Shown here one piece after another: positions 2,864 to 27,474 of a stretch of DNA of 64,000 nt. Numbering within the stretch: position 1 is the stretch's first letter; every line of letters starts with the position of its first letter. The translations under genes and the position numbers were made by a program. The stretch covers positions 124,001 to 188,000 of the IMG/VR virus record IMGVR_UViG_3300017786_003484; one strand, written 5' to 3'. The notes beneath the pieces are model-generated. The model was not told the origin of the DNA. It worked only from the letters and a program-made list of their open reading frames with translations, and ran no database searches.

Positions 2864-2939
<76 letters not shown>

Positions 2940-2966: not shown

Positions 2967-3212
2967 ATGAAATGGTTTTTTATATTAATGGTAATGACAC
3001 AAAATACTCCTGTGCAAGATCACCTATACCTTATCCAAGATCCAAAGTTTAGTACTGCTCCTGAATGTTTGCAGTTTGTTAATAATCAAATACAAATGTT
3101 AAAGGCTTTACAGATGCAAAAATTTCCTACTCAGGATATTGAAAATGTATATTGTATGACTCAGGATGCTTTAGATGAATTAGTTAAAGATAGAAGTAAG
3201 AAGGACATATAA
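2967..3212 (+). CDS. Hypothetical protein
   Basis: Hydrophobic N-terminus, two Cys; TAATG coupling to the next gene. Confidence 0.65.
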   Translation: MKWFFILMVMTQNTPVQDHLYLIQDPKFSTAPECLQFVNNQIQMLKALQMQKFPTQDIENVYCMTQDALDELVKDRSKKDI

Positions 3213-3865
3213 TGGAAATATTAAATAAAGACGGCATGCTAGATAAAAGAAATACAATGTACCCTTCTTATGCCGAAAAGATTACAAATGCATTTAAAAC
3301 TTCTGAGGCCTATAGTTCAACTTATGGATATGTACTAAACGGAGAAGTTGAATTACCAAATAAATGGATTGCAAGAGAGAAGGAATATTTTTCTTTTGCA
3401 AGTCATGAATCAACAGATTTTGAAGTAACAGGGACGGCAGTATTTTTTACTAGACTAGGACATATGCATCAAAACAACTTAGGAGGTCCTATTGAAGACA
3501 GTGGACGACTTTGTTATATAGATGGTTGTAGTGATAGTTTATTAATATATCCAAGTCGTGCAGGAGATCCAAGTGTTAACCTTTTAGCTTTCCCTGCAGG
3601 CATTAACCAAACATTTCATATTCACCCTAGTGTAAGATTAGGATTTGTTGCTGAAGGATCAGGTAATGCAGAAATGATAACAGGTGAAGTGTATCCGTTA
3701 GAAGCAGGAAGTATCTTTTGTATTGAAGAAAGAGAAAATCATAGATTTCAAACAATAAACGATACAATGAAAATTATTGCATACCATCCAGATGGAGATT
3801 GGGGACCAACTGATCAAAATCATACAATGTTAAATCGTACATATATACTCGACGGTGGCCAATAA
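3212..3865 (+). CDS. Cupin-domain protein
   Basis: YIDGCSDSLL...QTFHIHPSVRLG...HRFQT...IAYHPD. Confidence 0.75.
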   Translation: MEILNKDGMLDKRNTMYPSYAEKITNAFKTSEAYSSTYGYVLNGEVELPNKWIAREKEYFSFASHESTDFEVTGTAVFFTRLGHMHQNNLGGPIEDSGRLCYIDGCSDSLLIYPSRAGDPSVNLLAFPAGINQTFHIHPSVRLGFVAEGSGNAEMITGEVYPLEAGSIFCIEERENHRFQTINDTMKIIAYHPDGDWGPTDQNHTMLNRTYILDGGQ

Positions 3866-4569
3866 TGTTCACAACAGAACCAACACTACAATATCTAATT
3901 GTAGATGGTAGAACTAATATCATTCTAGTTGGAACAACAAATGCAGATGTAGCATCTGCATTGATGCTAAGAAGATCCTATTATAGATCAGAAGTAGACT
4001 ACATGAACAATTCAAATAAGAACAAAGGTCTTTTTGCTACTGGTTTAGATAGAGAGTTTGCTCAGATGCAAGTCACCTATAGAATGAATTATCATGTTAA
4101 GTGGGGCGGTACTCCAAACAAATCAGGTCGGCATGAAATAGAGACTGTTAGGGATTGGACTAATCTTAATAAACATGATGTTACAGAAACTAGACAAGAA
4201 GCAATGACAGCTGAAACATTCTATGCTAGTGCATGGCAGATTCTTATGCATTCTTTAAGATGGACACCTCCAGAAAATGACATGGTGATTAGATTTTATC
4301 CTGAACTGTTAGATGCAGTTAATAAATGTATCCCACTCCAAGATTATTATGTTGATGATATTATTGAATATGCTTCTATTACTGGAATAACACCTAAGCA
4401 AGCCTATAATGAAATTAACAACCAACTAATACCTATACGCAAACAACGTATTCGTGCGTATGCCCTCTGGCAAAAATATACCCAAAAGATGCTAATGGTA
4501 GACACTAAACAAGAATTTCAGAATATACTTTCAGAAATTAGAAACAACGTATTTTTAGGAACAGAGTAG
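3865..4569 (+). CDS. Hypothetical protein; candidate partner of the downstream PP-loop ATPase
   Basis: 234 aa; similar size and position to 12790 and 25314, but sequence similarity is weak. Confidence 0.65.
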   Translation: MFTTEPTLQYLIVDGRTNIILVGTTNADVASALMLRRSYYRSEVDYMNNSNKNKGLFATGLDREFAQMQVTYRMNYHVKWGGTPNKSGRHEIETVRDWTNLNKHDVTETRQEAMTAETFYASAWQILMHSLRWTPPENDMVIRFYPELLDAVNKCIPLQDYYVDDIIEYASITGITPKQAYNEINNQLIPIRKQRIRAYALWQKYTQKMLMVDTKQEFQNILSEIRNNVFLGTE

Positions 4570-4570
4570 A

Positions 4571-4888
4571 ATGTATAGACCATTACCAGACGGATTAACA
4601 ATAAGAGAATCAAATGTACAAGGATTAGGATTATTTGCAACCAAAGATTTTGATGCAGATGTAGTATTAGGAATTGTACATGTTATGAATAAAAACTTTC
4701 CTCATGGAAGTATTAGAACGGCATTAGGTGCTTTTTATAATCATTCAGATGACCCTAATTGCAAAAACCATGAAGGCTTCTGGCATCAGATTCCTGTCCG
4801 TTATTTAACTACAACTAAACCTATCAAAGCAGGTGATGAATTAACTGCAAAGTACACTTTATATAATAATTTTGAGGATGTAGCATAA
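4571..4888 (+). CDS. SET-domain protein (minimal lysine methyltransferase fold)
   Basis: GLGLFATKD, FYNHSDDPNC, IKAGDELTAKY. Confidence 0.85.
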   Translation: MYRPLPDGLTIRESNVQGLGLFATKDFDADVVLGIVHVMNKNFPHGSIRTALGAFYNHSDDPNCKNHEGFWHQIPVRYLTTTKPIKAGDELTAKYTLYNNFEDVA

Positions 4889-5979
4889 TGGGCGAATTGT
4901 TATTATCTACAGTTTCTAGTCAAGTACATACCGCAACAAACAAAACACAAGACCAACTGGATTTTTATTCCATTTATAAGGTTATTGCTCCAACAGTTAA
5001 TTTATGTGACAGAACTGGTCACGTTATAACTCCTTACAATTATAAAATTACATTACCATTACCAGATAATGGTAAAGTAGGAACATTTGAAGAAATTGCA
5101 ATCGCCAGGGCAAAAGAGTTATTAGAGTTAAGTAGGGCAACTAATAAGCCTTGTTTAGTTTTGTGGAGTGGAGGCATTGATAGTACAACAGTATTAACAG
5201 CATTAATTATAGCCGCTGATGGAGATTATAGTAATATTAAAGTTTGTATGAATGCTCAATCAATAAGAGAAAATCCTAAATTTTATTATAATTATGTTAG
5301 AGGTAAAATGGAAATTGCTCCTAGTGAAATAATGTTTGATTATATTAACAAAGATCATATTATTTGTAGCGGAGAGGGTTGTGATCAGTTATTTGGAACT
5401 GACATATATCTAGCAATTCAGGGCTGGGATAATAATGCAAGTATGTTCCAACCATATAGTTTTGAAAATGTTGGTGCATTTTTCGTACACAAAGGAATGT
5501 CTAACAGACAAGCAAGAATTTGGTTTGATATAATGGATAACCAAATTAAAGCAAAACAGCCTTGTGAAATTACAGATTTTAAAGATTTCTTTTGGTGGTA
5601 CAACTTCTGTTATAAATGGCAAAATGTATATTATAGACTTTTTAATATGGGAAAGAGAATGTCTATAACACTTGACCAAGATTTCTTTGATAACAACTAC
5701 CATAACTTTTTTATGAATGACGACTTTCAAAGATGGAGTATAAACAATCCTGATAAGAAAATTACAAAGGACTGGGCTTCTTATAAATTTACAGCCAAAG
5801 AGTTTATATATTCATTTGATAAGGATGAGGAATACTTTAATAATAAAGTTAAGATTCCAAGTCTGATAAACGTGTTTCGAACTATAGAGCATGTTGGCGG
5901 ACTAAATTCTGATTTTGAATTTTTACCTAAAAACTTTGATATTGAACCTTATATTAACAAAACAAACAGTTTTACTTAG
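4888..5979 (+). CDS. Asparagine-synthetase-like PP-loop ATPase lacking a glutaminase domain, paralog A
   Basis: WSGGIDST, SGEGCDQLFG, DFFWW, FQRWS, YK..AKEFIY. Confidence 0.8.
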   Translation: MGELLLSTVSSQVHTATNKTQDQLDFYSIYKVIAPTVNLCDRTGHVITPYNYKITLPLPDNGKVGTFEEIAIARAKELLELSRATNKPCLVLWSGGIDSTTVLTALIIAADGDYSNIKVCMNAQSIRENPKFYYNYVRGKMEIAPSEIMFDYINKDHIICSGEGCDQLFGTDIYLAIQGWDNNASMFQPYSFENVGAFFVHKGMSNRQARIWFDIMDNQIKAKQPCEITDFKDFFWWYNFCYKWQNVYYRLFNMGKRMSITLDQDFFDNNYHNFFMNDDFQRWSINNPDKKITKDWASYKFTAKEFIYSFDKDEEYFNNKVKIPSLINVFRTIEHVGGLNSDFEFLPKNFDIEPYINKTNSFT

Positions 5980-6015: not shown

Positions 6016-6957
6016 ATGGAATATGGATTAGACAACAAACAAGAATTTTATGTTGATTATACATCTTGTACTAGACCAGTAGGTAACATGCGAGATGAAA
6101 TGGAAATTGCATGTACTAACTTAGCAGAAGATGCACAAAGTAGAAATACTTCTGTACTCATCAGCCTTAGTAGTGGATTAGATAGTCAGGTATTGTTGCA
6201 CACATTTCATTCTTTAGGACTGCCATTTAGTACAGCCTTCTGCCATTGGCCAGGTTATAATGATAACGAACGTAGTAATATAGATATACTAGATAACAAG
6301 TATAATAATAAAACTACTATTATTGAAATTAATCCAGATGATCATAAAGAAGAAGTTGAAAAACTAGCAATCAGTACTGGAATTCCAGCAGAACATCATT
6401 TAATGAAAATGTTTTTAAAGCAACTACCAAATGAATTAGATATATTACAAGGTATTGAGAGTTTTGATTTTATATTCCGTAATAAAAAAACATATTGTAT
6501 GGAAAGTTGGACTGCAATAGAAATAGCAAGTCAAAGAGCATTACAAGAAGTTGACCGAGAAGGTAAGATAGTATCAATTGACAGACGTTCTAATTTTAAC
6601 GAGTTTACACTAGCATTGTTAAGTGATTCAATAGTTGAAGGCTATTGCAATTCTATTAGGTATATTGCTGGCAATGGATTAATTGAGAAAAAATCAGGAG
6701 AGTCACCTCCTCTAATATTTTCATGGGAATATTATGTCAAACCTTTATTATATGGTTTATATTGGAAAGGTGAATTGGAGTTATTTCCAAAAGATGTTAG
6801 TGCAAATAATATTGCTTGGATAATGAATCCAAGCGACAACAGGCTAAGGCACAATTATAAAAATAAATGCGCCTATGTTGAAAGGAACGAATTAATAAAC
6901 CATCTAAAAGATTTTGGGTCTAATAAGACTCGTAGATGGCATCAGTATAAAGGATAA
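6016..6957 (+). CDS. PP-loop (adenine-nucleotide alpha-hydrolase-like) protein
   Basis: ISLSSGLDSQ. Confidence 0.6.
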   Translation: MEYGLDNKQEFYVDYTSCTRPVGNMRDEMEIACTNLAEDAQSRNTSVLISLSSGLDSQVLLHTFHSLGLPFSTAFCHWPGYNDNERSNIDILDNKYNNKTTIIEINPDDHKEEVEKLAISTGIPAEHHLMKMFLKQLPNELDILQGIESFDFIFRNKKTYCMESWTAIEIASQRALQEVDREGKIVSIDRRSNFNEFTLALLSDSIVEGYCNSIRYIAGNGLIEKKSGESPPLIFSWEYYVKPLLYGLYWKGELELFPKDVSANNIAWIMNPSDNRLRHNYKNKCAYVERNELINHLKDFGSNKTRRWHQYKG

Positions 6958-6961
6958 AAAT

Positions 6962-8272
6962 ATGCCGGCACCACTTATAGATCCAAACGGATCTTTACCA
7001 GAAAAGAATATAATTGTAAATCCTTATATTAATAAGAAGTTAGGATATTATATTGTAGACGGCTTTGAATTTGATTCAAAAATTAGAGCAGGGTTACATT
7101 CTGTTAAAGTAAATAAGCCAGTACAATGGATATTTAACAACAAAGAATTTAGATCGCACGACTGGAGTGTTGAACCTAGTGAAACTTTAGATCAGTTATA
7201 TGATGCAAGAGCTTTTGACCTAAGAGTAAAATATGATTATCTTATTTTAAGTTTTAGTGGAGGAAGCGATTCTTGGAATATTTATAAAGCATTTCAACGA
7301 CAAGGCTTACATATTGACGAGGTAATTGTTAATACAATGTCTAAGGCAAGTAAAGGATTAGTAACAGATACTAGTACTAAAGCATTTAATGCTCCTGAAA
7401 GCGAACATGTAAGAAACACAGTACCTAGGCTTAAAGAAATACAAAAAGAAATGCCTATGACAAAGATTACTGTTACTGATCAAAGTGACTATCTGTTTGA
7501 AAGCCTAGAGGCGGCCGGAGATGCTAGTTGGGTATTAGAGAAACGTGAGGGATTAAATCCTGCAGGTATTACTAGATTCAATTATTTGCATTTTATGGAA
7601 GTAAGAAAGAGATTTGATAAAGATAAAAAGATAGGGCTGATAGTTGGTATTGAAAAGCCTAGAACACTTGTTCACCAAGGACGTTTCTTTGTTAGATTTG
7701 CAGACAGAAGTACCAATATGATTACAGTAGCAGAACATTTAAAAGACTATCCTAATTCAACAGTTGAATTCTTTTACTGGTCTCCAGATTGTGTTCCTTT
7801 GCTTATTAAACAAGCTCATGTTGTTAAGAAATACCTTGAGGCTAATCCTTCTATGCAAGTTCATTTCAATAGTGAAAATTCTACAGGAAAAGTATATAGA
7901 TTATTGCACGAGCCTTTACTTAGAAACTTATTATACAGTACCTGGGATCAACGTTGGTTCCAAGCAGAGAAAGCAGTATTAGATTGGGATAGTGAATTTG
8001 ATCAATGGTTTAGAGTTGGTTATCAAGATACTAAAGCATATCAAGTTTGGATGGAAGGTCTAAAGTATGTAGCAGACAACTTAAAGCCCTTTCTACGTTA
8101 TGTAGAAGATCCTGATAATGATATATGGAATACTAGTGTAATGAATTCTTTTATTGATAGGGGTGATGAATTAGTTGGACAACGTCCGGATGGTTTGGCT
8201 CCGGTCCTTCATAACTACGAAGTTGGTAGAATGAAAGTAACCGGGCCAGGTGTTAATACGTTTATGCGTTAG
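6962..8272 (+). CDS. PP-loop ATPase family protein
   Basis: YDYLILSFSGGSDSWN, GIEKPR, EFFYWSPD; start moved to ATG 6962 after AAGGA. Confidence 0.7.
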   Translation: MPAPLIDPNGSLPEKNIIVNPYINKKLGYYIVDGFEFDSKIRAGLHSVKVNKPVQWIFNNKEFRSHDWSVEPSETLDQLYDARAFDLRVKYDYLILSFSGGSDSWNIYKAFQRQGLHIDEVIVNTMSKASKGLVTDTSTKAFNAPESEHVRNTVPRLKEIQKEMPMTKITVTDQSDYLFESLEAAGDASWVLEKREGLNPAGITRFNYLHFMEVRKRFDKDKKIGLIVGIEKPRTLVHQGRFFVRFADRSTNMITVAEHLKDYPNSTVEFFYWSPDCVPLLIKQAHVVKKYLEANPSMQVHFNSENSTGKVYRLLHEPLLRNLLYSTWDQRWFQAEKAVLDWDSEFDQWFRVGYQDTKAYQVWMEGLKYVADNLKPFLRYVEDPDNDIWNTSVMNSFIDRGDELVGQRPDGLAPVLHNYEVGRMKVTGPGVNTFMR

Positions 8273-9189
8273 TTCTTCTGTAATGGAATATTATTGTCTA
8301 TTAAAAATGCTTTTAATTTAACATTATTACGGAAAGCAAAAAGTTTTGTTTCTAAGTCTGTTCCTGCAATAGGAAACAATCCAATATTTTTAAGTCCTTG
8401 AACAAACTCTTTTCTCTTAAAAACATTGCTAATATCTTCTTTAATACTATCTAAGTTAGGCGACTTCCTTGATGCAATTAATCCAATAGGACTAACAAAC
8501 GGAAACTCTTCCTTGTACACATCTTGCCATGTAGGAATGTCTAATCCTAGATCTTGACTTGACATGATACTTGTAATATTAGCATTTAAATGATTTTTTA
8601 CAGTTGGATAATTTGCAAACATACAATCAATATTTCCTGCAAGTAGATCACTTAATGCAGTAGTTCCTCCTTTGGCATAAGGAATAACCTTACTTTCAAT
8701 TTTTAAGTTTTTAATAAGAACTTCAGTAGCAAGATGCTCACTACTACCATATCCTGCCGCTCCAAAAAGAATTTTGCCTTTGCTGAATTTTTCAAGGTCG
8801 CTAACAGTAAAAAACTTTCTGTCGTTGTTGCAGACTAGTACGTTTGGCATTGTAGCAACAACACCAACTAGTTCAAAGTCTTTAATAGGATCATATGGTA
8901 AATCGTTAAACCTAATTTCGTTAGTAACATAGATTTGTGCCATTGTTGCTGTAATAATAGCATTATTGGTTTTTAACATATGTTTGATTGCAATTTTGCC
9001 TGCGGCACCTGGCCTGTTTACAACATTATATTTGTTATCAGAATTAATAACATTTTTTTCAATTAGTCTTGTAGTCTGATCACTTGGGCCTCCGGGTCCG
9101 TGATGTACTGTAAATTCAATATCTGCGGCTGAGGCAGTCGAAACAGCAAATGCCATAATTGCGGCACTAGTTAAAATATTTTTAATCAT
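8269..9189 (-). CDS. Tripartite tricarboxylate transporter substrate-binding protein (TctC/Bug family)
   Basis: Signal peptide, PGGPSD, NRPGAAG, IPYAKGG..ALSDLLAG. Confidence 0.85.
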   Translation of the reverse strand: MIKNILTSAAIMAFAVSTASAADIEFTVHHGPGGPSDQTTRLIEKNVINSDNKYNVVNRPGAAGKIAIKHMLKTNNAIITATMAQIYVTNEIRFNDLPYDPIKDFELVGVVATMPNVLVCNNDRKFFTVSDLEKFSKGKILFGAAGYGSSEHLATEVLIKNLKIESKVIPYAKGGTTALSDLLAGNIDCMFANYPTVKNHLNANITSIMSSQDLGLDIPTWQDVYKEEFPFVSPIGLIASRKSPNLDSIKEDISNVFKRKEFVQGLKNIGLFPIAGTDLETKLFAFRNNVKLKAFLIDNNIPLQKN

Positions 9190-11922: not shown

Positions 11923-12081
11923 ATGAAAAACATAATCTCATTCGTAGGTGTCTTTCATATTTGTGTTTTCCTATTTTTCTATACATTTTTATGGGTAGAA
12001 TATCCTCCCTTAATGTATATGATGTTAATATGGGCAATTCCTGCTTGGCTACTTTTATTATATATTTCTATTACTAAATAA
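11923..12081 (+). CDS. 52-aa membrane protein (not in the ORF track)
   Basis: MKNIISFVGVFHICVFLFF...WLLLLYISITK, 2 TM; preceded by TTTAAATA-TTAG. Confidence 0.5.
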   Translation: MKNIISFVGVFHICVFLFFYTFLWVEYPPLMYMMLIWAIPAWLLLLYISITK

Positions 12082-12146
12082 TTGGTAAGGCAAACTTATA
12101 AAGAAATGTTAAGTAACATTATAAGCAAATTCGTAGGAGAATACAC

Positions 12147-12512
12147 ATGGCAGAATATTGGGGTTATCATACACTCTTTGACTGTTTACACGGCGATATT
12201 GATAAAGTACGTTCTGGAGAAAATATTAAAAACTTCATAGAAGAACTAGTTGATGCTATCGGAATGAAAGCATATGGCGATCCTATAATTGAACATTTTG
12301 CAACACATGATCCAGATGCGGCAGGACATAGTTTAGTTCAACTAATTGAAACAAGTTCTATAACAGGACATTTCGTTGATAAAAACGGAGACCTTTATAT
12401 AGATGTGTTTTCCTGTATGGAATATGATGTACAAGTAGCACAGTCTGTTGTACAAAAATATTTTTCTCCTGAAAGAATTAGAGTAAATTACTTAACTAGA
12501 CAGGCTAGTTAA
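12147..12512 (+). CDS. speD: Pyruvoyl-dependent AdoMetDC (SpeD/SpeH)-family decarboxylase
   Basis: WGYH..FD, G.SLVQLIETSSITGHF, YIDVFSC; substrate uncertain. Confidence 0.8.
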   Translation: MAEYWGYHTLFDCLHGDIDKVRSGENIKNFIEELVDAIGMKAYGDPIIEHFATHDPDAAGHSLVQLIETSSITGHFVDKNGDLYIDVFSCMEYDVQVAQSVVQKYFSPERIRVNYLTRQAS

Positions 12513-12513
12513 T

Positions 12514-12786
12514 ATGTCAAAGAAAAAATACCCCTTCTGGGCTAGAGCAAATCATCACTTAGATCATTCTAATATGGGATATTGGTATCACCTTTGGCAT
12601 TCGTTTTATAACGGAAGTAGACTTTTGGCATTTGTTCTAACCAGTTATATTCATGGTATTTTTCCTTGGTTGTTTAAGTTTCATGCCGCCCACGGAGTCA
12701 TTCGTATTAATGAGGAATTAAAAAGAATGCCTCATTTAAAAAAGGCAATGGACGAGATAGCAGAAGAGTATAAAAAGAAGGATTAA
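12514..12786 (+). CDS. DUF6356-like small protein, paralog of 46968
   Basis: HL....MGYWYHL...IHGIFPWLF. Confidence 0.6.
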   Translation: MSKKKYPFWARANHHLDHSNMGYWYHLWHSFYNGSRLLAFVLTSYIHGIFPWLFKFHAAHGVIRINEELKRMPHLKKAMDEIAEEYKKKD

Positions 12787-12789
12787 GTT

Positions 12790-13590
12790 TTGTCTTGGGG
12801 TAACCAAATTAAAGAGAAGGTCTCTTTCTTCCATATGAATGCATGGAAAAGAAGGCCTAATGCTAACATATTTTATAGTCCAGGAGTTGACAGATGTTTT
12901 GCAGTCGACACCTTTGATCCTTATACAGCATTTGATGTTGCTAAGATATTAAGCAGTAAAATGCCAGCCATTGCAGTAATTGTATTACATTTTGAAGATA
13001 GAACAGATGTTAATAATAGTAATGTTACAGATTTTACAATAACAGATAAACAAGTAATTGGTGGAGCCGCTGGGTTATTATTCAGTAGGCAGACTCCTGT
13101 ATTTAGAAAAATGCAAAAGCCAGTTTTAGAATTCTGTGAAAGTATGCCTTTAGATTATATGCCAGGCTCAAATGGATATAATACTTTTATGAAGTTCTCA
13201 GAATATACTAAATTTGTAATACGTTGTTGGCATGCAACAAAATTGTTTGATATGGTGCATAACTTTTTACCAATGGAAGAGTTTGCAAACGAATATCTTT
13301 CTGGAGAAGTACCAGACGATATGTGCTTACCAGCAGATAGTAGTAACACAACAACATCTGACTTAGGACCTAAAAATGAAATTCGTAGAATACTTTATAA
13401 TGCAGATTCTATAGACGAAGCAATGTCTAAGATTGCTGATATGTGGAGAAATAACAATACTCCACATTCCTTTCCTATGCGAAAGATGTTTTATGCAATA
13501 CTTAATCACCCTGACTATCCAGAACCAGAAGATTTAGGTAAGTCACAATCAGATACTGATTTAACACATTACTCAGGTTATCTATTATGA
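12790..13590 (+). CDS. Unknown protein; partner of PP-loop paralog B, paralog of 25314
   Basis: YSPGVDR...AKILSSK.P and RILY...IDEA.S.I..W shared with 25314; ATGA overlap with the next gene. Confidence 0.75.
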   Translation: MSWGNQIKEKVSFFHMNAWKRRPNANIFYSPGVDRCFAVDTFDPYTAFDVAKILSSKMPAIAVIVLHFEDRTDVNNSNVTDFTITDKQVIGGAAGLLFSRQTPVFRKMQKPVLEFCESMPLDYMPGSNGYNTFMKFSEYTKFVIRCWHATKLFDMVHNFLPMEEFANEYLSGEVPDDMCLPADSSNTTTSDLGPKNEIRRILYNADSIDEAMSKIADMWRNNNTPHSFPMRKMFYAILNHPDYPEPEDLGKSQSDTDLTHYSGYLL

Positions 13591-14888
13591 ACTTAGATAC
13601 AAAGTTATATTACACATCAGTTAATTGGGACGGCCAGGAAGGAAATAAGTTTTGGGAGAAAACTTACGACGAAGTAGGAGCAGGAGGCAAGTTTGTAATT
13701 GACTTTGCCAGAAGAATTAATCCAAATAGATTCTCTACAAGAGATAATTCAACATGGACTCTTCCTTGGCCTGACGAGATTTTACCCAAGTACAAACTAG
13801 TTCAATACGATCCTAACTATACAGGTTCTTTTGCTGAAGCGTCAGATAGTAAAGCAATGGAATATGCTAGACGTATTGATAAGAATAATGAGAAATTTGC
13901 TATCATGTATTCCGGAGGATTAGACTCAACAATCATTACAACGGCGTTAATTAAAAATTTAACAAAAGAACAACTTAAAAACGTTTCTATCTGTACTAGT
14001 GTTCAGGCAGTAGTTGAAAATCCAAATTACTGGAGAAAGTTTATCTTTGGTAAATTTAAAATTATTGATTCGATGGTAAACAAATATGATACTTTACTAG
14101 AACTAGGATATACTCCAGTAACAGCAGATGACGGAGATTGTATTCATGGAACAGTATTAGGTTTAAACTTTTATCATGCATGGGAACAAAAGATTGGCGA
14201 AAGGTTAACAGCAGATCAGAGGGCTCATGTAAGAAACAACTTGCATAAACTTAGTGATAAAGACACACATTTTAGTGTATTTGAAGATGCATTAGTTGAG
14301 TACTTTCAGTATAGCAATACACCATGGTGGCCTGTTCCTAAGAATTTAAATCCAGATCCAATGTTTGGTCGTAAACTATACGACAAGTATGCCTTAAATG
14401 CAAAAACAGCATCTTGTCCTGTTATTAGTTTGCAAGATTTCTTTTGGTGGTTAATTTTTAATGTTAAAATGATAAACTGTGGAGTTCGAGGTGCAATGTA
14501 TTATAACGATCGTTATGATATGAATATAGCAATAAACAAGATTGAGAATTGGTACTTATGGCCAGCATATCAACAGTGGTCAATGAATAACAATAATAAC
14601 GGACAAAAAATTGGATACGGTGCTGGTACATATAAGAAAGTCGCAAGGGACTATATTTTTGAGTTAGATCAAAATATATGGTATAGAGATTTTAAGTTGA
14701 AACTTGAAAGCATGGGACAGAATAGTGTTCGTCAAAAAGTTGATACAACTGTTTACCCAAAACCCATGCATAGGTTTGGTATTACAACTGACTACAAGAT
14801 GTTAGATGTATTAGATGTAAATGTACAAGATTATATTAAGCATCATTTGTCCAAATTTGAGATTACTTGGAGTGAGGAAACAAAATGA
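13587..14888 (+). CDS. Asparagine-synthetase-like PP-loop ATPase, paralog B
   Basis: YSGGLDST, TADDGDCIHGT, DFFWWLIFNVK, YQQWSM, YK..ARDYI. Confidence 0.8.
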   Translation: MNLDTKLYYTSVNWDGQEGNKFWEKTYDEVGAGGKFVIDFARRINPNRFSTRDNSTWTLPWPDEILPKYKLVQYDPNYTGSFAEASDSKAMEYARRIDKNNEKFAIMYSGGLDSTIITTALIKNLTKEQLKNVSICTSVQAVVENPNYWRKFIFGKFKIIDSMVNKYDTLLELGYTPVTADDGDCIHGTVLGLNFYHAWEQKIGERLTADQRAHVRNNLHKLSDKDTHFSVFEDALVEYFQYSNTPWWPVPKNLNPDPMFGRKLYDKYALNAKTASCPVISLQDFFWWLIFNVKMINCGVRGAMYYNDRYDMNIAINKIENWYLWPAYQQWSMNNNNNGQKIGYGAGTYKKVARDYIFELDQNIWYRDFKLKLESMGQNSVRQKVDTTVYPKPMHRFGITTDYKMLDVLDVNVQDYIKHHLSKFEITWSEETK

Positions 14889-15457
14889 GAATAAAAGGTA
14901 GAGTGAAACAAGATGCTAAAGGTATGGATGTTCAAATATGGCACACAGATACCATTGGGCAGGAACCACTTTTAACAGCATCTTATTATAGAGCAACATT
15001 ATTTTTACTAGAAAAAGGTTGGGGTATGACTCCTTATGAATTAGCATCAAGTTCACATAGAGCAATATTTTTAACAACTACAACAGAACCAGAAGAATTT
15101 TTAGGTGGAGTTATTTGGGAATATCATTCTTATAACAAACAGGCAATGATTGTTTTAATCTGGACAGAGGACAAGTGGAGAGGTAGACACTTATATACTT
15201 TACTACAACACGAACTTGAAAGAGAAAGTGTAATATGCGGAGGTACTAGTATTGCAAGTATGGCTCATGCTGATAACGAGCCAAGACTAAAAGCTGGAGC
15301 AAGAGAAGGCATGTTTCCTCAATTTCATAGGCTTTATAAAGATCTAACTCCAGATCTATTTGAGAGAAAAAAGCAAATATCCGAAGAAGCCGGAAAGCCC
15401 TGGAGAGAAATTAATCGAGACAGATATAAATTAGAATCTCGTATGACAACAAAATAG
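14885..15457 (+). CDS. GNAT-family acyltransferase
   Basis: IWTEDKWRGRHLY (acyl-CoA motif), HADN...K.G. Confidence 0.7.
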   Translation: MRIKGRVKQDAKGMDVQIWHTDTIGQEPLLTASYYRATLFLLEKGWGMTPYELASSSHRAIFLTTTTEPEEFLGGVIWEYHSYNKQAMIVLIWTEDKWRGRHLYTLLQHELERESVICGGTSIASMAHADNEPRLKAGAREGMFPQFHRLYKDLTPDLFERKKQISEEAGKPWREINRDRYKLESRMTTK

Positions 15458-15487
15458 GTTGACAGCAGTATTCTAATAGTGTATTAT
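15457..15487 (+). promoter_or_regulatory. Sigma70-type promoter for tRNA-Arg
   Basis: GG-TTGACA-17 nt-TATTAT. Confidence 0.7.
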
Positions 15488-15506
15488 AACGAACAATTTG
15501 GAATAA

Positions 15507-15583
15507 CTGCCCTTAGCTCAGCTGGATAGAGCAACTGCCTTCTAAGCAGTAGGTCGCAAGTTCGAATCTTGCAGGGCAGGCCA
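15507..15583 (+). tRNA. tRNA-Arg(UCU)
   Basis: CTGCCCT/AGGGCAG acceptor stem, ACTGC-CT-TCT-AA-GCAGT, T-loop, CCA. Confidence 0.97.
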
Positions 15584-15599
15584 AATGCAAGGATTAATA

Positions 15600-16259
15600 A
15601 TGTCTGAGAAAAGAATACTAACATTTGAAGAGACAGAGCGAGATCAAAAATTACACGTTGACTGGGTTTTAGAAAAAACAAATTTTAAAAGAAATGGCTT
15701 CTTTGTTGAAATGGGTGCAGTTGATGGCATCAGACTGAGTAATACATTAACATTAGAACGAGATTATAATTGGTCAGGAATCTTAGCAGAGCCTGATCCA
15801 AGACATCACGAAAGCCTAAAAAACAATAGACCTGGTAGTAGTATTGAGTTTGATTGTGTTTGGGCAAACTCTGGAAAAACAAAAACATTCTTTCAATCTA
15901 AAAAAATTACAGATCAACGCAGTACACTTTCAGATTTTGCAGAAGAAGGCGATGCAAAAGAAATTCGAAAAAAATGGCCTACATTTGATGTTAAAACTAT
16001 AAGCCTATTAGATATGCTTGATAAGCATAATGCACCAAAGTATATAGACTATCTTAGCCTTGACACTGAAGGTAGTGAATATCAAATTCTTAGAACTTTT
16101 GATTTTAGCAAATACAAGTTTGGATTGATTACAGTAGAGTGGAATCATCATAAAAGAAGAGGACAACGTATCTGCGATCTTCTAACATCTAATGGTTATT
16201 ACATACCTGAAGACTCGAAAGACATATTTGAATTTGACTATGCATTTGTTAATAAATAG
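15600..16259 (+). CDS. FkbM-family methyltransferase
   Basis: FFVEMGAVDG..SNT, GILAEP, IDYLSLDTEGSE. Confidence 0.9.
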   Translation: MSEKRILTFEETERDQKLHVDWVLEKTNFKRNGFFVEMGAVDGIRLSNTLTLERDYNWSGILAEPDPRHHESLKNNRPGSSIEFDCVWANSGKTKTFFQSKKITDQRSTLSDFAEEGDAKEIRKKWPTFDVKTISLLDMLDKHNAPKYIDYLSLDTEGSEYQILRTFDFSKYKFGLITVEWNHHKRRGQRICDLLTSNGYYIPEDSKDIFEFDYAFVNK

Positions 16260-19745: not shown

Positions 19746-19819
19746 GCGGGTATTGTGTAGTGGTAAGACCTTAGCCTTCCAAGCTAATGACAGGAGTTCG
19801 ATTCTCCTTACCCGCTCCA
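19746..19819 (+). tRNA. tRNA-Gly(UCC)
   Basis: GCGGGTA/TACCCGC acceptor stem, TTAGC-CT-TCC-AA-GCTAA, U73, CCA. Confidence 0.96.
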
Positions 19820-23395: not shown

Positions 23396-24001
23396 ATGTT
23401 CTCATTTAAAGACGTAGATAAAAGTATGCTATTAAAACTAGTAGCATTACATGTTTTAGTTATTGTAGTTAGTAATGCCTTAGTTAGTATTCCAGTTGAA
23501 ATTTTTGGTGTTAAACTAACATGGGCGGCATTTACTTTTCCACTAGTGGTATTAGCAACTGATTTGACAGTACGACTATTAGGAAAGGAAATTGCTCGAA
23601 GTACAATTACCGCGGCATATCCGCTGGCTATTATTGGATCTATTCTAGTAGTACTAGCAGAAGGTGCTCCTACAAGTGTAGCACTTCGTATTGGTTTTGC
23701 CAGTGCAACAGCCTATGCAGTAGGTACAATGCTTGACGTATATGTATTCCAACATATTAGAGAAAAGTTAGTAGACAACTGGTGGTTAGCACCGGCTGTA
23801 TCAACAGTAGCCGCTAACGTTATTGACACTTATGCATTCTTTGCAGTAGCCTTTCACAATTCAGCAGACGAGTATATGTCAGCAAACTGGATGGAAGTAG
23901 CAGGTTCGCAAGTCATAATTAAGATTGCAGTAGGACTAATTGTCTTCCTACCAGCTTATGGTGTATTACTAAGACACCTTAAAAATAAAGTAGAAGGATA
24001 A
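23396..24001 (+). CDS. yhhQ: Queuosine-precursor (preQ0/preQ1) transporter, YhhQ/VUT family
   Basis: SNALV.IP, TWAAFTFP...ATDLTVR, RIGFAS..AY..G..LD, WWLAP..ST, DTY.FF. Confidence 0.88.
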   Translation: MFSFKDVDKSMLLKLVALHVLVIVVSNALVSIPVEIFGVKLTWAAFTFPLVVLATDLTVRLLGKEIARSTITAAYPLAIIGSILVVLAEGAPTSVALRIGFASATAYAVGTMLDVYVFQHIREKLVDNWWLAPAVSTVAANVIDTYAFFAVAFHNSADEYMSANWMEVAGSQVIIKIAVGLIVFLPAYGVLLRHLKNKVEG

Positions 24002-24690: not shown

Positions 24691-25317
24691 ATGGCACTTG
24701 TACCTATGGTAGTAGAAAAGACCTCTGAAGGAGAAAGAGCATACGATATCTATAGTCGTTTGCTTAAAGAAAGAATTGTTATGGTTGAAGGAGTAGTAAA
24801 CGATAACATGGCTAATTTAATTGTTGCACAATTACTTTACCTTGAGGCAGAAAACGATAACGATATTACAATGTTTGTTAACAGTCCAGGCGGATCAGTT
24901 ACTGCTGGCTTAGCAATTTATGATACTATGCAATTTATTGGTTGTGATGTTGCAACTTATGCTATGGGCCAAGCATGTTCTATGGGATCAGTATTAGCAA
25001 TGGCAGGTGCAAATGGAAAGAGATATGTATTGCCTAGCTGTCGTACAATGATTCATAGAGTTAGTTCTGGAACACACGGAACAAGCGGAAGTGTTCATGT
25101 ACAAGAATTACAGTTTGAAGATGCTATTCGTAGTATGGAAGAATCTAAAAAACTTAACGAACGTTTAACTCAACTATATGTTACCCACAATACAAAAGGT
25201 AAGACATATGATCAGATGTTTGAAACTATGAAGTTTGATACTTTTCTTGACGCCGCCGCAACTGTTGAATTTGGACTTGCAGATAAAGTTATTGCAAACA
25301 GGGCTGATGTAAAATGA
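24691..25317 (+). CDS. clpP: ATP-dependent Clp protease proteolytic subunit
   Basis: [37 protein letters not shown]. Confidence 0.96.
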
Positions 25318-26048
25318 GTATAATGACTGAACAAGGTTTAAAGGAACTAGTCGCTAAACAAGATACTTTAGGTAGAGTTCCTTTTGATGGTAGTAGATTT
25401 TATTCAGCAGATGCAAACTACCTTATATATTCTGTTGGAGTAGACAGATTTATATTATCTGATAGACTTGATCTATGGACTACATTAGAAACTGCTAAGA
25501 TACTTTCTTCAAAGATTCCATTAACTTTAATTGCACTCACAAACTGTAGTAAAGATATTAACAACGAAAATTGTTTGTTTTATACAGTATCTGAGAAAAC
25601 TGGTTGGAAGATGTCTGAGAATGCATGTCCAGAATTAGGTGCAGTATCAGGCGAGGATGCAGTAGAAGAGGCTGGCATTGCTTTAGACTTTAAAGATCCT
25701 ATTAGTGCTAATTGGTTAGTTAACTTACAAAACTATGCATTCTTTTGCCAGAGGATATTACATGCAATTAGAATTGCTGATGCTGAAACCAATTCAGACG
25801 ATGCAGTATTTTTCAAAGAGTTACTAGATCACGGAATTGCGGCAGTATTACAATCAAGAGCTGATCATACAAGAACTCCGCAAGGAGCATTACTTTGGAC
25901 TAAAAGGGTACTATATACTTCAAAGAATATTGACGAAGCAATCAGTGGTATTAATAAGATATGGGATAGCAGGGTACTTAGAGATAAAGATATAAGAGAT
26001 AGATTTTTTGAGTATTCAGGATTACCTTTTAATCCTGGAGACAATTAA
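25314..26048 (+). CDS. Unknown protein; partner of PP-loop paralog C, paralog of 12790
   Basis: YSVGVDR...AKILSSKIP; RVLY...[11 protein letters not shown]. Confidence 0.75.
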
Positions 26049-26049
26049 T

Positions 26050-27474
26050 ATGTCTGAAAATTTTACCCATGATACTTTTAGTACTGAGCAATATTATTAT
26101 GATGAACAGGCAAGAAAACATCCTACAACGGTAGCAGTTAAGTCTAAACTACCAAAAGCAAAAGTAACATCTTCTGGCTTAAAAGTAGGAGATAGTTTAT
26201 TTCATCATGGTATAACATGGAATGTAAGAACAGAAGAAATATACACTCCAATATATAATGATTTGCCATTAGCAGGAAAATATCATGTTGACTTCGCAAA
26301 GCAGTTTACATATAATAGATTTTCTCCTAGGCACGGTCATTGGGCTCAACCTTATCCTGTAATTCCTTTACCAGAATTAGCTATGCCGTCTTTTGATCCT
26401 AATCACAATAAAACATGGACAGAATGTACAGATGAAAGAGCTCAATGGGTTAAGGCTTTATTAGAAAAAGAGTCCAATCGTAAAATTGCATTATACTATT
26501 CAGGTGGAATTGATAGTTTGGTTGTTCTTATTGCATTACTAAAAGCATTAGATACGAAAGAACTCCGTTCACGTTTAACTATTTGTTGCAGTATGGAAAG
26601 TGTAATTGAATATCCTGTTTTCTTTGAAAAAGAAGTGCTTGGAAAATTTAAGATTATAGATCTTAAAATGGGTACTGTTCGTTTTAATAATTTAATCAAT
26701 GAAGGATATACAGTTATTACAGCCGACTTAGGTGATGCTATGTTTGGAACTGAAGTGTCTACACAATTTTATTATACTTTTAGGAACCATGCTGAACGTT
26801 TAGGTTTTCAAGGAAGAAAAATGGTATCTGATTTACTTGAAGATATAGGTAAACCAGATGCACACTATTCTGTTTATAAAGATGTTTTAATTGCATATTT
26901 AGAAACTCCAAATGTTTATTCTATGCCAACTAAAAGTAGAGAGAATATATTAACACCAGGCTTTGGAGAATGGTATTATAATAAACTAGACAAATTAGCA
27001 CAGACATCTGATTATACGGTTCATAGTTTACATGATTTCTTTTGGCAGATTATTTTTAATGTTAAATGGATGCATTGCTCATGTCGTTGTTTTATGTTCT
27101 TTGGTGACCATACTAATAACAAACCATTGTTTCAACATAAACGGTATATAAACTGGTTTCAGTCTGATGATTATCAACGTTGGTCTATGGTTAATAACAA
27201 TACAGGACAAAAGATTAAAGGTGTAACTGCTTCTACATATAAGTGGGCGGCCAGAGAATACATATACGATTATACAAAAGATGAATGGGCATTATATTTT
27301 AAACTTAAGATTGCATCTTTTCAAAAGATTGCTCCTGTTCACAGTTATCCACATGCTATGGACATTATAGATAGATTTGCTTTAAACACAGATTATACTG
27401 TAGTTCGTCATAGCGATCCTGGAGTGATTGATTATATACATCATCACCTTTTTAACTACAATGACTTACTCTAA
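26050..27474 (+). CDS. Asparagine-synthetase-like PP-loop ATPase, paralog C
   Basis: YSGGIDSL, TADLGDAMFGT, DFFWQIIFNVK, YQRWSM, YK..AREYIY; GGAG SD. Confidence 0.8.
   Translation: MSENFTHDTFSTEQYYYDEQARKHPTTVAVKSKLPKAKVTSSGLKVGDSLFHHGITWNVRTEEIYTPIYNDLPLAGKYHVDFAKQFTYNRFSPRHGHWAQPYPVIPLPELAMPSFDPNHNKTWTECTDERAQWVKALLEKESNRKIALYYSGGIDSLVVLIALLKALDTKELRSRLTICCSMESVIEYPVFFEKEVLGKFKIIDLKMGTVRFNNLINEGYTVITADLGDAMFGTEVSTQFYYTFRNHAERLGFQGRKMVSDLLEDIGKPDAHYSVYKDVLIAYLETPNVYSMPTKSRENILTPGFGEWYYNKLDKLAQTSDYTVHSLHDFFWQIIFNVKWMHCSCRCFMFFGDHTNNKPLFQHKRYINWFQSDDYQRWSMVNNNTGQKIKGVTASTYKWAAREYIYDYTKDEWALYFKLKIASFQKIAPVHSYPHAMDIIDRFALNTDYTVVRHSDPGVIDYIHHHLFNYNDLL

What the first reader, a model, noticed from the sequence alone, without database searches (positions are those of the whole stretch)
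12790..14888. Repeated two-gene module: unknown partner plus glutaminase-less asparagine-synthetase-like ATPase
Seen: three paralogous PP-loop proteins (4888, 13587, 26050) share SGG(I/L)DS, an AsnB-like (S/T)x(E/D)xxDxxxGT motif, DFFW, Q(R/Q)WS and YK..A(R/K).(Y/F)I. None has an N-terminal Ntn glutaminase domain. Copies B and C each sit directly behind a ~250-aa gene (12790, 25314), and those two genes are clear paralogs of each other (YSxGVDR...AKILSSKxP; RxLY...IDEA.S.I..W). Copy A has a similar-sized gene (3865) one ORF upstream. Known: AsnB-fold synthetases that work without a glutaminase (lasso cyclases, beta-lactam synthetase) adenylate a carboxylate and couple it to a non-ammonia amine. 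Inference: the pair was duplicated together as enzyme plus substrate-recognition subunit of an undescribed amide-forming system. This is my best candidate for a new system in the window.
Basis: partly seen in the sequence, partly recalled or inferred. Interest (0 to 1): 0.82.

Follow-up and report, generated by a model that had tools for sequence, protein, structure and literature searches.

The report
Paired phage amide-ligase gene modules
A marine jumbo phage carries several copies of a two-gene unit: a fast-evolving protein of unknown fold followed by a stripped-down asparagine-synthetase-like ATP enzyme. The same unit is inherited together in hundreds of uncultured phages and some bacteria, so it looks like a widespread uncharacterised enzyme system, but its substrate is still unknown.

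Summary
The window encodes three paralogous PP-loop proteins: A at 4888, B at 13587 and C at 26050. All lack a glutaminase domain. B and C each follow a paralogous ~250-aa gene, with overlapping stop and start codons. The same phage contig holds a fourth pair outside the window.

Across 79 viral and 80 cellular loci, chosen only by similarity to the ATPase, about 90–98% of homologues have a gene abutting upstream on the same strand. The ATPase and partner trees are almost congruent (24 of 26 strong splits shared), including paralogous pairs within tandem arrays. The pair is therefore inherited as a unit.

Gene 3865 is not a paralog of the B and C partners. It belongs to a second partner family that sits directly upstream of A-type ATPases in other phages; in this window a SET-domain gene is inserted between them. 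A-type units often include a cupin, here at 3212.

The ATPase is a very divergent PP-loop enzyme. Its nearest relatives are AsnB-family enzymes; copy A keeps an SGEGCDQLFG motif. The partner has no known fold or family.

Function is inferred, not shown: an adenylating amide ligase whose partner supplies specificity or is itself the co-substrate, as in QatB–QatC.

The parts
12790..13590 (+). Partner B (266 aa, TTG start), partner family 1. No Pfam, PHROG, NCBIfam or PADLOC hit. Novel fold.
   Evidence: Paralog of 25314. Homologues sit directly upstream of the ATPase in all B/C-type loci. AF2 pLDDT 74; no PDB match with E<2. The only fold matches are uncharacterised proteins of uncultured Caudovirales. 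The family has 434 representative clusters, all standalone among the 150 listed.
13587..14888 (+). ATPase B (433 aa): glutaminase-less PP-loop enzyme. SGGLDS at residue 109; second motif TADDGDCIHGT.
   Evidence: AF2 pLDDT 90.5. Best Foldseek hits are TsnB9, AsnB, BLS and CarA, at E about 5e-3. ATGA overlap with the partner's stop codon.
14885..15457 (+). 190-aa gene overlapping the stop codon of ATPase B. It belongs to a cluster found in 23 of the fetched loci (directly downstream of the B-type ATPase in about a dozen distinct ones). The L001 and L005 members carry weak or significant GNAT (Acetyltransf_1) hits.
   Evidence: Cluster c4. L001 and L005 Pfam annotation. The window copy itself has no significant Pfam hit.
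25314..26048 (+). Partner C (244 aa), partner family 1. Its start overlaps the stop codon of the ClpP gene.
26050..27474 (+). ATPase C (474 aa): SGGIDS at residue 151; second motif TADLGDAMFGT. Long-branch B/C-type paralog.
3212..3865 (+). Cupin protein (217 aa), the third component of A-type units. Same family as the cupin next to the ATPase in bacterial loci.
   Evidence: Pfam Cupin_2, E=2.4e-8. Hits the HMM built from bacterial cupins at E=3.7e-68. Lies within 3 genes of 13 of 51 A-type phage ATPases and 43 of 84 cellular ones.
3865..4569 (+). Partner family 2 member (234 aa). Not detectably related to family 1.
   Evidence: BLAST-clusters (E 1e-7 to 1e-10) with proteins that sit directly upstream of A-type ATPases in about 20 other phage loci. 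hhalign against family 1 gives probability 2-3%.
4571..4888 (+). SET-domain gene (105 aa) inserted between the family-2 partner and ATPase A. None of the other fetched loci has a gene at this position.
   Evidence: Pfam SET, E=8e-11. Neighbourhood tables.
4888..5979 (+). ATPase A (363 aa), short A-type. SGGIDS at residue 94; AsnB-like motif SGEGCDQLFGT at residue 163.
   Evidence: A-type clade.
6016..6957 (+). Further, more distant PP-loop-like protein (313 aa, SSGLDS) directly downstream of ATPase A. Its cluster recurs near the units in 16 loci.
   Evidence: sequence. Cluster c6. Weak TilS-N and ThiI hits.

Best explanation
Each unit encodes an obligate, cognate two-protein enzyme.

The downstream protein is a very divergent PP-loop ATP pyrophosphatase of the asparagine-synthetase (AsnB) type. 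It has lost the whole N-terminal glutaminase domain. By analogy with AsnB, beta-lactam synthetase and lasso cyclases, it uses ATP (giving AMP + PPi) to adenylate a carboxylate. An amine that is not glutamine-derived ammonia then attacks, forming an amide.

The fast-evolving ~200-270-aa protein is encoded immediately upstream, in the position and roughly the size of the missing N-terminal domain. It is made with the ATPase through translational coupling, binds it, and supplies the second-substrate site or specificity.

What is shown: the ATPase is a PP-loop enzyme; there is no glutaminase domain; the pair is strictly adjacent, co-inherited and co-diverging; units are multiplied within genomes.

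What is inferred: physical complex formation, carboxylate adenylation, amide formation, and the partner's role.
For: PP-loop and AsnB-type character:
- SGGxDS is invariant across the family.
- Copy A has SGEGCDQLFGT where E. coli AsnB has SGEGSDEVFGG.
- The best fold matches are AsnB-family enzymes: TsnB9, ASNS, AsnB, BLS and CarA.
- 13 of 50 family members give weak Asn_synthase hits, more than for any other family.
- ESM Atlas neighbours include Asn_synthase clusters.

Coupling of the pair:
- 105 of 107 ATPase ORFs in the viral and assembly loci, and 76 of 84 in cellular loci, have an abutting upstream same-strand ORF.
- Start and stop codons overlap.
- 30 of 53 tree splits are shared, against a random mean of 0.28 and maximum of 3. 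24 of 26 strongly supported ATPase splits recur in the partner tree, including the pairing of paralogs from tandem arrays.
- Mantel r is 0.89 and 0.92 for the two partner families.

The partner is always a standalone protein and always upstream.
Against:
- AsnB membership is sub-threshold: Pfam is not reached, Foldseek TM is only about 0.29, and profile-profile alignment covers only the PP-loop.
- The upstream proteins fall into at least six sequence families with no detectable mutual homology. One family even has an N-terminal membrane helix. That is less expected for a conserved enzyme subunit than for varied substrates.
- The partner model does not resemble the Ntn glutaminase domain it would be replacing.
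- No residue is invariant across the wide partner family 1.
- A few ATPases lack a partner of their own: L025, L080, L097 and L101.
Confidence: 0.4

Rival explanations
1. The partner is not a subunit but the dedicated protein co-substrate. The PP-loop enzyme adenylates a carboxylate, either on a small molecule or on the partner itself, and the product is a covalently modified partner protein. This is as proposed for QatB-QatC and shown for CdnD-Cap9 (N-terminal deazaguanylation), or, for peptides, lasso macrolactam formation.
For: - There is precedent for a PP-loop enzyme plus an adjacent motif-less protein that inserts a tail into the active site and is modified (PMC13376578).
- The upstream proteins are of several unrelated families while the ATPase is conserved.
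- The partner evolves about twice as fast as the ATPase, judged by median terminal branch length (0.58 vs 0.28).
- The genes are paired 1:1, even in tandem arrays.
- The partner model has disordered termini (residues 1-20 and 256-266). A C-terminal hydrophobic hexapeptide (YSGYLL-like) is conserved in most B-type partners, and bacterial family g3 has a conserved C-terminal tail.
- Neighbouring genes are of protein-modifying types: SET, Asp/Arg hydroxylase, cupin, GNAT-like and ClpP.
Against: - There is no conserved Gly2 or N-terminal tail. Several partners start directly at the first beta-strand.
- The C-terminal tail is absent from partner C and from several clades.
- No single residue is conserved across the wide family as a candidate modification site.
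- The ATPase is closer to AsnB than to QueC, Cap9 or QatC.
Confidence: 0.3
2. The ATPase is a nucleobase-, tRNA- or DNA-modifying PP-loop enzyme (like QueC, TilS, MnmA or ThiI). The partner acts as a nucleic-acid or substrate adaptor.
For: - Copy A has a weak PHROG QueC-like hit, and some related clusters show QueC Pfam traces.
- tRNA genes lie nearby.
- A Vut_1 (queuosine-precursor transporter family) gene sits three genes upstream of ATPase C, with one uncharacterised gene and ClpP between it and partner C.
- In one phage group the unit sits just upstream of PolB.
- GenBank annotates the only homologue in a cultured phage as MnmA.
Against: - The second motif and the fold neighbours are AsnB-type, not TilS, MnmA or QueC.
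- There is no invariant Cys for sulfur transfer or a QueC-type zinc site.
- Proteins are neutral to acidic: median pI 6.6 for the ATPase and 5.7 for the partner.
- The proteins next to the bacterial homologues, guessed to be QueE and QueD, turned out to be a cupin and an unknown protein.
- The MnmA label is an automatic annotation.
Confidence: 0.12
3. The pair is an accessory factor for virion or tail-fibre maturation, for example cross-linking or chaperoning receptor-binding proteins, rather than a metabolic enzyme.
For: - In Xanthomonas, Comamonas and Undibacterium the unit follows Baseplate_J and a 335-aa gene, which is a prophage or tailocin tail-fibre position.
- In the L050/L051 group it lies between a Peptidase_S74 fibre gene and a Gly_rich_2 fibre gene.
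- The window has an S74 fibre gene 2.6 kb downstream of ATPase B.
- In phage Cygsa01 it follows baseplate and large tail genes.
Against: - Tail-fibre regions are general hot spots for cargo genes.
- Most loci show no structural neighbours. In Bacteroidota the triad sits alone in the chromosome.
- No Caudo_TAP or chaperone domain was found in 75 partners.
Confidence: 0.08
4. Adjacency is only inherited synteny among related phages, and the two genes are functionally independent.
For: Many of the loci come from related marine phages with shared neighbours such as DctP, TctC, FA desaturase and GNAT-like genes.
Against: - Adjacency with overlapping codons holds across A-type and B-type clades at 20-25% identity. 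It also holds in bacteria of several phyla where all other neighbours differ.
- Paralogous pairs within one genome co-segregate in both trees.
Confidence: 0.04

Closest known systems
Asparagine synthetase B and its glutaminase-inactive relatives (beta-lactam synthetase, carbapenam synthetase CarA, TsnB9)
   Same: Both have the PP-loop SGGxDS. The second signature is SGEGxD(E/Q)(L/V)FG in copy A and degenerate in B and C. They are the best structural neighbours. Expected chemistry: carboxylate adenylation followed by attack by an amine.
   Different: All known members keep a fused N-terminal (Ntn-type) domain, active or not. Here that domain is absent and a separate, unrelated protein is encoded upstream. 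The ATPases fall below the Pfam Asn_synthase threshold. TM-score is only about 0.29. The C-terminal helical domain carries its own invariant motifs: DFFWW, QxWS and NNNNGQKI.
Lasso-peptide B/C pair (leader peptidase/RRE plus AsnB-like cyclase)
   Same: A ~200-aa protein is encoded just upstream of a glutaminase-less AsnB-like ATP enzyme, and the two act together.
   Different: The partner has no invariant Cys-His-Asp and no PqqD or transglutaminase hit in 75 members. There is no fold match. The ATPase lacks the N-terminal domain of lasso cyclases. No short precursor gene is consistently adjacent.
QatB-QatC and CdnD-Cap9 (QueC-like PP-loop enzymes that act on an adjacent partner protein)
   Same: A PP-loop adenylating enzyme is paired with a motif-less partner protein and forms a stable heterodimer, with the partner proposed or shown to be the second substrate (PMC13376578). 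This is the closest functional analogy for a PP-loop enzyme with its own dedicated protein.
   Different: Those enzymes are QueC-type; the ATPases here are AsnB-type. The partners here lack the conserved Gly2 N-terminal tail. There are no PADLOC hits. The units sit in phage genomes and are multiplied, and are not part of four-gene defence operons.
Ctu1-Ctu2 / Ncs6-Ncs2 and CysD-CysN (PP-loop enzymes with obligate non-identical partners)
   Same: They show that PP-loop enzymes can depend on a dedicated second subunit (from general knowledge; not tested here).
   Different: Those partners are a degenerate PP-loop paralog or a GTPase. The partner here is neither: there are no Pfam hits and the fold is unknown.

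Membership tests
PP-loop ATP pyrophosphatase superfamily | SGGxDS(T) pyrophosphate-binding loop after the first beta-strand of a Rossmann-like domain | tested here: met
   S-G-G-x-D is invariant and the following Ser nearly so in the 50-sequence alignment; all six positions are invariant in the 24-sequence alignment. The AF2 model places the motif after strand 103-107 and before helix 112-124. Profile hits to the PP-loops of GMPS, ASNS, TilS and LarE.
PP-loop ATP pyrophosphatase superfamily | Overall alpha/beta nucleotide-binding fold shared with solved members | tested here: met
   49 of the top 50 Foldseek PDB hits are PP-loop enzymes (AsnB, NadE, LarE, TtuA, GMPS; the other is the methyltransferase GtmA), though they are weak: best E=5e-3.
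Asparagine synthase family (Pfam PF00733; AsnB, BLS, CarA, lasso cyclases) | Score above the Pfam gathering threshold | tested here: not met
   No hit for A, B or C. 13 of 50 family members reach only sub-threshold E-values, best 0.0016.
Asparagine synthase family (Pfam PF00733; AsnB, BLS, CarA, lasso cyclases) | Second ATP-site signature SGEGSDE(V/L)FGGY | tested here: met
   Copy A has SGEGCDQLFGT where E. coli AsnB has SGEGSDEVFGG. B has TADDGDCIHGT and C has TADLGDAMFGT, which are degenerate forms. The Asp of this motif is nearly invariant across the family (>=90% of 50 sequences; D184 invariant in the 24-sequence alignment).
Asparagine synthase family (Pfam PF00733; AsnB, BLS, CarA, lasso cyclases) | Fused N-terminal class-II (Ntn) glutaminase-type domain, active (Cys after Met) or degenerate | tested here: not met
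   Only 93-150 residues precede the PP-loop, against 234 in AsnB. There are no GATase hits, and residue 2 is G, N or S.
Asparagine synthase family (Pfam PF00733; AsnB, BLS, CarA, lasso cyclases) | Whole-domain structural or profile similarity | tested here: inconclusive
   Foldseek TM 0.29, E=5e-3. hhalign against E. coli AsnB aligns only 25 columns around the PP-loop, probability 35%.
Lasso peptide B/C system | B protein with a transglutaminase-like Cys-His-Asp triad and/or a PqqD-like RRE | tested here: not met
   No invariant Cys or His in the partner alignment. No such Pfam hit in 75 partners. No PDB fold match.
Lasso peptide B/C system | Short precursor peptide gene adjacent | tested here: inconclusive
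   No recurrent small ORF appears next to the units in the neighbourhood tables (ORFs of at least 50 aa only). ORFs shorter than 50 aa were not searched.
QueC / QatC / Cap9 type | QueC-family sequence match and a C-terminal Cys cluster | tested here: not met
   Only a weak PHROG QueC-like hit for copy A (E=8.6e-4, with no stretch passing on its own). No invariant Cys in the family. No PADLOC hit.
QueC / QatC / Cap9 type | Partner with a conserved Gly2 N-terminal tail that enters the active site | tested here: not met
   Residue 2 of the partners is S, W, T, A, N and others. Several partners have no N-terminal tail at all. Entry into the active site cannot be tested with these tools.

The most novel reading that the evidence does not exclude
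The units could be a new class of protein-conjugation systems carried by phages and bacteria. In this reading each AsnB-type PP-loop ligase covalently modifies its own dedicated partner protein: an ATP-dependent amide or isopeptide linkage, cyclisation, or attachment of a small carboxylate or amine. The cupin, GNAT-like, SET and hydroxylase genes would act as further tailoring enzymes. This would parallel the recently found QueC-type protein deazaguanylation, but with a different enzyme lineage and with several orthogonal enzyme-substrate pairs per genome.
Probability: 0.25. Interest if true: 0.85.

Novelty: new variant of a known kind. Interest (0 to 1): 0.62.

Why it matters
The unit is abundant. 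The partner family has 434 clusters at 50% identity. ESM Atlas clusters with hundreds of members exist. The window's copy is found nearly identically in at least 14 marine metagenome runs from 13 studies.

It is absent from Pfam, PHROGs, NCBIfam and PADLOC, apart from weak sub-threshold PP-loop hits.

If the pair is a split amide ligase, it shows a new way of building AsnB-type enzymes, with the N-terminal domain replaced by a separate co-evolving protein. It would also give a set of naturally orthogonal enzyme-partner pairs, up to three or four per genome.

If the partner is the substrate, it adds a second enzyme lineage to the newly discovered protein modifications catalysed by PP-loop enzymes.

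Either way it assigns a testable role to a large block of unannotated phage genes. Cultured bacteria that carry the triad make experiments possible: Aquimarina, Tenacibaculum, Neolewinella, Comamonas, Undibacterium and Xanthomonas.

Tried and rejected
1. The partner as a split-off Ntn glutaminase domain. Rejected: there is no fold match to any PDB chain (best E=2) and no N-terminal Cys.
2. The partner as a lasso B protein or RRE. Rejected: no conserved Cys or His, no Pfam hit in 75 members, and no fold match.
3. The bacterial neighbours g1 (210 aa) and g3 (127 aa) as QueE and QueD, which would have pointed to 7-deazaguanine chemistry. Refuted: g1 is a cupin and g3 has no family.
4. Homology between partner family 1 and family 2, and with the bacterial upstream families g2, g3 and g24. 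hhalign gives 0.1-5% probability. Only a similar N-terminal beta-hairpin/helix pattern is visible by eye.
5. Partner-ATPase fusions as 'Rosetta stone' evidence. None appears among the top 150 partner representatives; all are 135-297 aa. The 603-aa ORF in L055 is open at the contig end, and it has a collagen-like Gly-X-Y stretch in frame upstream of the ATPase. It has no partner-HMM hit, so it is not used as evidence.
6. A better AsnB profile. The last word-indexed search returned only near-identical enterobacterial AsnB sequences and was uninformative. hhalign against single AsnB aligned only the PP-loop.
7. A defence-system identity. There are no meaningful PADLOC hits.
8. Nucleic-acid binding judged from charge. 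The pI values are neutral to acidic.
9. Expression. Six marine RNA libraries hold 10-20% of the sampled words. The four laid on the region gave only sparse, read-length, exact-match contigs over SpeD, the partner and the ATPase. DNA carry-over cannot be excluded.
10. Cultured phages. tblastn with B found nothing in 50,697 phage records. Copy A found only Pseudomonas phage Cygsa01, where the gene is auto-annotated as MnmA.
11. Literature. Full-text searches found no description of this pair.
Full report
**What is in the window**

The window is positions 124,001-188,000 of a 244-kb IMG/VR phage contig (UViG_3300017786_003484, L007). GC content is about 35%. Almost all genes are on the + strand, and there are three tRNAs.

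The finding's coordinates hold two ORFs:
- 12790-13590: 266 aa, TTG start. The start is confirmed by homologues that begin MTWGNQ and similar.
- 13587-14888: 433 aa.

They overlap in ATGA.

- B against C: 36% identity, E=5e-82.
- B against A: 23% identity, E=1e-18.

All the quoted motifs are present. The two ~250-aa upstream genes, 12790 and 25314, are paralogs at E=4e-14. Gene 3865 shows no similarity to them. A fourth pair, 43% identical to B, lies on the same contig about 9 kb beyond the window's end (L032).

**The ATPase**

None of A, B or C reaches any Pfam, PHROG, NCBIfam or PADLOC threshold.

A 24-sequence profile against PDB sequences matches only the PP-loop of GMP synthase, asparagine synthetase, TilS and LarE, at E about 0.04-0.3.

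The AF2 model of B is confident (pLDDT 90.5). Its best PDB neighbours are AsnB-family enzymes (TsnB9, human ASNS, E. coli AsnB, beta-lactam synthetase, carbapenam synthetase), followed by NadE, LarE and TtuA. All are weak: E at best 5e-3, TM about 0.29.

When 50 diverse family members were scanned, Asn_synthase was the most frequent weak Pfam hit (13 members, best E 0.0016), followed by the generic PP-loop family (6 members). ESM Atlas neighbours include Asn_synthase clusters.

At the sequence level, copy A has SGEGCDQLFGT where E. coli AsnB has SGEGSDEVFGG. B and C carry degenerate versions.

The PP-loop lies 94-151 residues from the N-terminus, against 235 in AsnB, so there is no room for a glutaminase domain.

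My conclusion is that this is a new, very divergent PP-loop family. Its nearest known kin are AsnB-type synthetases, but it is not a member of Pfam PF00733.

**The partner**

Partner family 1 (12790, 25314) has no hit in any of the four libraries. The AF2 model (pLDDT 74) has:
- a disordered first 20 and last 11 residues;
- a beta-rich N-terminal half;
- a helical C-terminal half.

It matches no PDB chain (best E=2). In BFVD it matches only uncharacterised ~200-aa proteins of uncultured Caudovirales (TM 0.52/0.65, E=6e-5).

A profile search of 1.84 billion representatives found 434 clusters at E<=1e-3. The 150 listed are all 135-297 aa, nearly all with a single matched stretch, so these are standalone proteins.

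Within the B-type clade many polar residues are invariant: D34, R35, D40, D43, K57, N76, N78, K87 and D183. Across the wide family none is. Most B-type partners end in a hydrophobic hexapeptide such as YSGYLL, VSTFIV or ITGFAV. Partner C does not.

**Is the pairing more than chance or synteny?**

Every B/C-type ATPase has a family-1 partner ending within −84 to +15 nt of its start. There are two exceptions. In one, three genes are inserted between the pair. In the other, a second ATPase shares a locus with one partner.

Overall, 105 of 107 ATPase ORFs have an upstream same-strand ORF of at least 100 aa within −130 to +150 nt.

The upstream proteins of the short A-type ATPases fall into two BLAST clusters. 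One contains 12790 and 25314. The other contains the window's 3865, with E 1e-7 to 1e-10 to nine members.

So 3865 is a genuine partner of a second family. In this genome a SET-domain gene (Pfam E=8e-11) has been inserted between it and ATPase A.

Several phages carry tandem arrays of partner-ATPase units: three in L049 and L064, two in L053, L061, L069 and L083.

**Co-divergence**

For 56 non-redundant family-1 pairs I built maximum-likelihood trees of the ATPase and of the partner.
- They share 30 of 53 splits. Label permutation gives a mean of 0.28 and a maximum of 3.
- 24 of 26 ATPase splits with SH-aLRT of at least 95 recur in the partner tree, and 18 of 20 the other way.

This is not just phage phylogeny. 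Paralogs from one tandem array separate and pair with their orthologues from other phages identically in both trees. Examples are L053_7670 with L049_5183, L061_5824 with L064_7513, and L064_5767 with L061_3949.

In the window's genome:
- B groups with L008 inside the same 8-member clade in both trees.
- The fourth copy groups with L023 in both.
- C is a deep long branch in both.

Distance matrices correlate at r=0.89 (family 1) and r=0.92 (family 2), Mantel p<=0.0005. Partner branches are about twice as long as ATPase branches.

The unit is therefore inherited, duplicated or transferred as a pair. The data do not tell in-genome duplication from acquisition of whole units.

**Beyond phages**

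A scan of one genome per prokaryotic species found 83 relatives at 20-38% identity. They include:
- Isolates of Xanthomonas albilineans, Comamonas phosphati, Undibacterium, Duganella, Polynucleobacter, Neolewinella, Aquimarina, Tenacibaculum and Bernardetia.
- Bdellovibrio-like MAGs, which carry B-type pairs.

76 of 84 ATPases again have an abutting upstream ORF:

| Upstream family | Count |
|---|---|
| Family 1 | 7 |
| Family 2 | 14 |
| g2 (~165 aa, N-terminal membrane helix) | 16 |
| g3 (~127 aa, conserved C-terminal tail) | 15 |
| g24 | 4 |
| Cupin (g1) or another ATPase | 5 |
| Others | 15 |

No homology is detectable among these families.

43 of 84 have a ~210-235-aa cupin within three genes. 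The window's gene 3212-3865, directly upstream of 3865, is the same cupin: E=3.7e-68 to the bacterial cupin HMM. 13 of 51 A-type phage units have it, but only 1 of 36 B/C-type units.

B-type units are often followed instead by a small GNAT-like gene, found in 23 of the fetched loci and directly downstream in about a dozen distinct ones. Here it is 14885-15457, overlapping B's stop codon.

**Context**

The units sit among accessory genes:
- porin, Asp/Arg beta-hydroxylase, cupin, SET and TctC;
- SpeD, DUF6356 and an FkbM methyltransferase;
- lipase and an S74 tail fibre;
- a beta-lactamase-fold protein, Vut_1, ClpP and an HD domain.

In other phages the unit lies just upstream of PolB, or between tail-fibre genes together with a radical SAM enzyme. 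In Xanthomonas, Comamonas and Undibacterium it follows Baseplate_J, which is a prophage or tailocin position. No neighbour is universal, so context does not fix a substrate.

**Mechanism**

Established knowledge of PP-loop enzymes (summarised in PMC13376578) is that they AMPylate a carboxyl or keto oxygen of a first substrate, releasing PPi. A nitrogen or sulfur nucleophile of a second substrate then attacks. The AsnB-type second motif and the fold neighbours point to carboxylate activation and amide formation.

Every known glutaminase-less AsnB relative keeps its N-terminal domain as a scaffold. Here that domain is missing, and a separate protein of similar size is always encoded at its position, upstream and translationally coupled.

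My best reading (confidence 0.4) is a split two-protein ligase in which the partner supplies the second-substrate site or specificity.

The main rival (0.3) is that the partner is itself the co-substrate and becomes modified. This has been shown for CdnD-Cap9 and proposed for QatB-QatC (PMC13376578).
- For the rival: the upstream families are diverse and unrelated, they evolve fast, their termini are disordered or carry conserved tails, and the neighbours are protein-modifying genes.
- Against the rival: there is no universally conserved terminus or residue.

Less likely are nucleobase or tRNA chemistry (0.12), a tail-fibre maturation role (0.08) and mere synteny (0.04).

**Occurrence and expression**

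The B unit occurs nearly identically (at least 96% of sampled words) in 14 DNA runs from 13 marine or seawater studies, 2018-2025. Six marine RNA libraries hold 10-20% of the sampled words; in the four laid on the region, only scattered exact read-length contigs lie over the unit. That is compatible with transcription but is not proof.

**Verdict**

I found no description of the pair in four protein-family libraries or in the searchable literature.

I rate it a new variant of a known kind: a PP-loop/AsnB-type adenylating ligase with a novel split architecture and a partner of novel fold.

Noticed in passing
window 35093-43250 (+) and 44166-45647 (+): Tandem array of six ORFs of 393-514 aa. Five of them hit Pfam Radical_SAM weakly (E 1e-4 to 5e-9). 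A carbamoyltransferase follows shortly downstream (Carbam_trans_N/C, E=6e-53). This looks like a large tailoring-enzyme block.
   Followed up: no
window 4571-4888 (+): A minimal 105-aa SET-domain protein (Pfam E=8e-11) is inserted between the family-2 partner and ATPase A. None of the other fetched loci has a gene at this position.
   Followed up: partly
window 6016-6957 (+): Another, more distant PP-loop-like protein (SSGLDS motif, 313 aa) lies directly after ATPase A. Its cluster recurs near the units in 16 phage loci, often beside a ~275-aa protein (cluster c33). This may be a further enzyme-partner pair.
   Followed up: partly
same contig, outside the window (L032:5240-7278; contig about 196964-199002, minus strand): A fourth partner + ATPase pair in the same phage genome, 43% identical to B. 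Its orthologue is in L023.
   Followed up: partly
window 12147-12512, 12514-12786, 23396-24001, 8269-9189(-), 15-683, 749-1471: Host-like accessory genes lie around the units: SpeD (AdoMet decarboxylase), DUF6356, Vut_1 (vitamin/queuosine-precursor transporter family), a TctC-type solute-binding protein, a porin fragment and an Asp/Arg beta-hydroxylase. DctP- and TctC-type binding proteins are also the commonest downstream neighbours of B-type units in other phages.
   Followed up: partly
L051:2711-3121 (+), with equivalents in L047, L050 and L071: A 136-aa ORF with an extremely Cys/Asn-rich C-terminal half (NC.NC repeats ending in a run of CA repeats, then DGGGG) lies directly upstream of a 477-aa radical SAM gene. 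It is three genes upstream of an A-type unit and sits between tail-fibre genes. It looks like a RiPP-style precursor.
   Followed up: no
L055:3-1814 (+): A collagen-like Gly-X-Y stretch (GPQGPTGITGPQ...) is in frame immediately upstream of an A-type ATPase, in an ORF that is open at the contig end. It could be a fusion or an unusual upstream gene.
   Followed up: no
L086 (Pseudomonas phage Cygsa01, PP179332.1 11421-13570): This is the only cultured-phage relative found. It has two PP-loop genes annotated 'tRNA-specific 2-thiouridylase MnmA', each preceded by a hypothetical gene, just after baseplate and large tail genes. The MnmA names are probably transferred from the PP-loop motif alone.
   Followed up: no
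L095, L096, L098, L100, L105 (Xanthomonas, Comamonas, Undibacterium): In these bacteria, family-2 partner + ATPase + cupin lie right after a Baseplate_J gene and a ~335-aa gene. This is the tail-fibre region of a P2-like prophage or tailocin.
   Followed up: partly
window 2864-2939, 15507-15583, 19746-19819: Three tRNA genes: Thr-TGT, Arg-TCT and Gly-TCC. The Arg tRNA is the only part of 12000-16000 with DNA similarity to cultured phages (Melnitz, Mosig and others). It also collects many unrelated contigs in RNA libraries.
   Followed up: no
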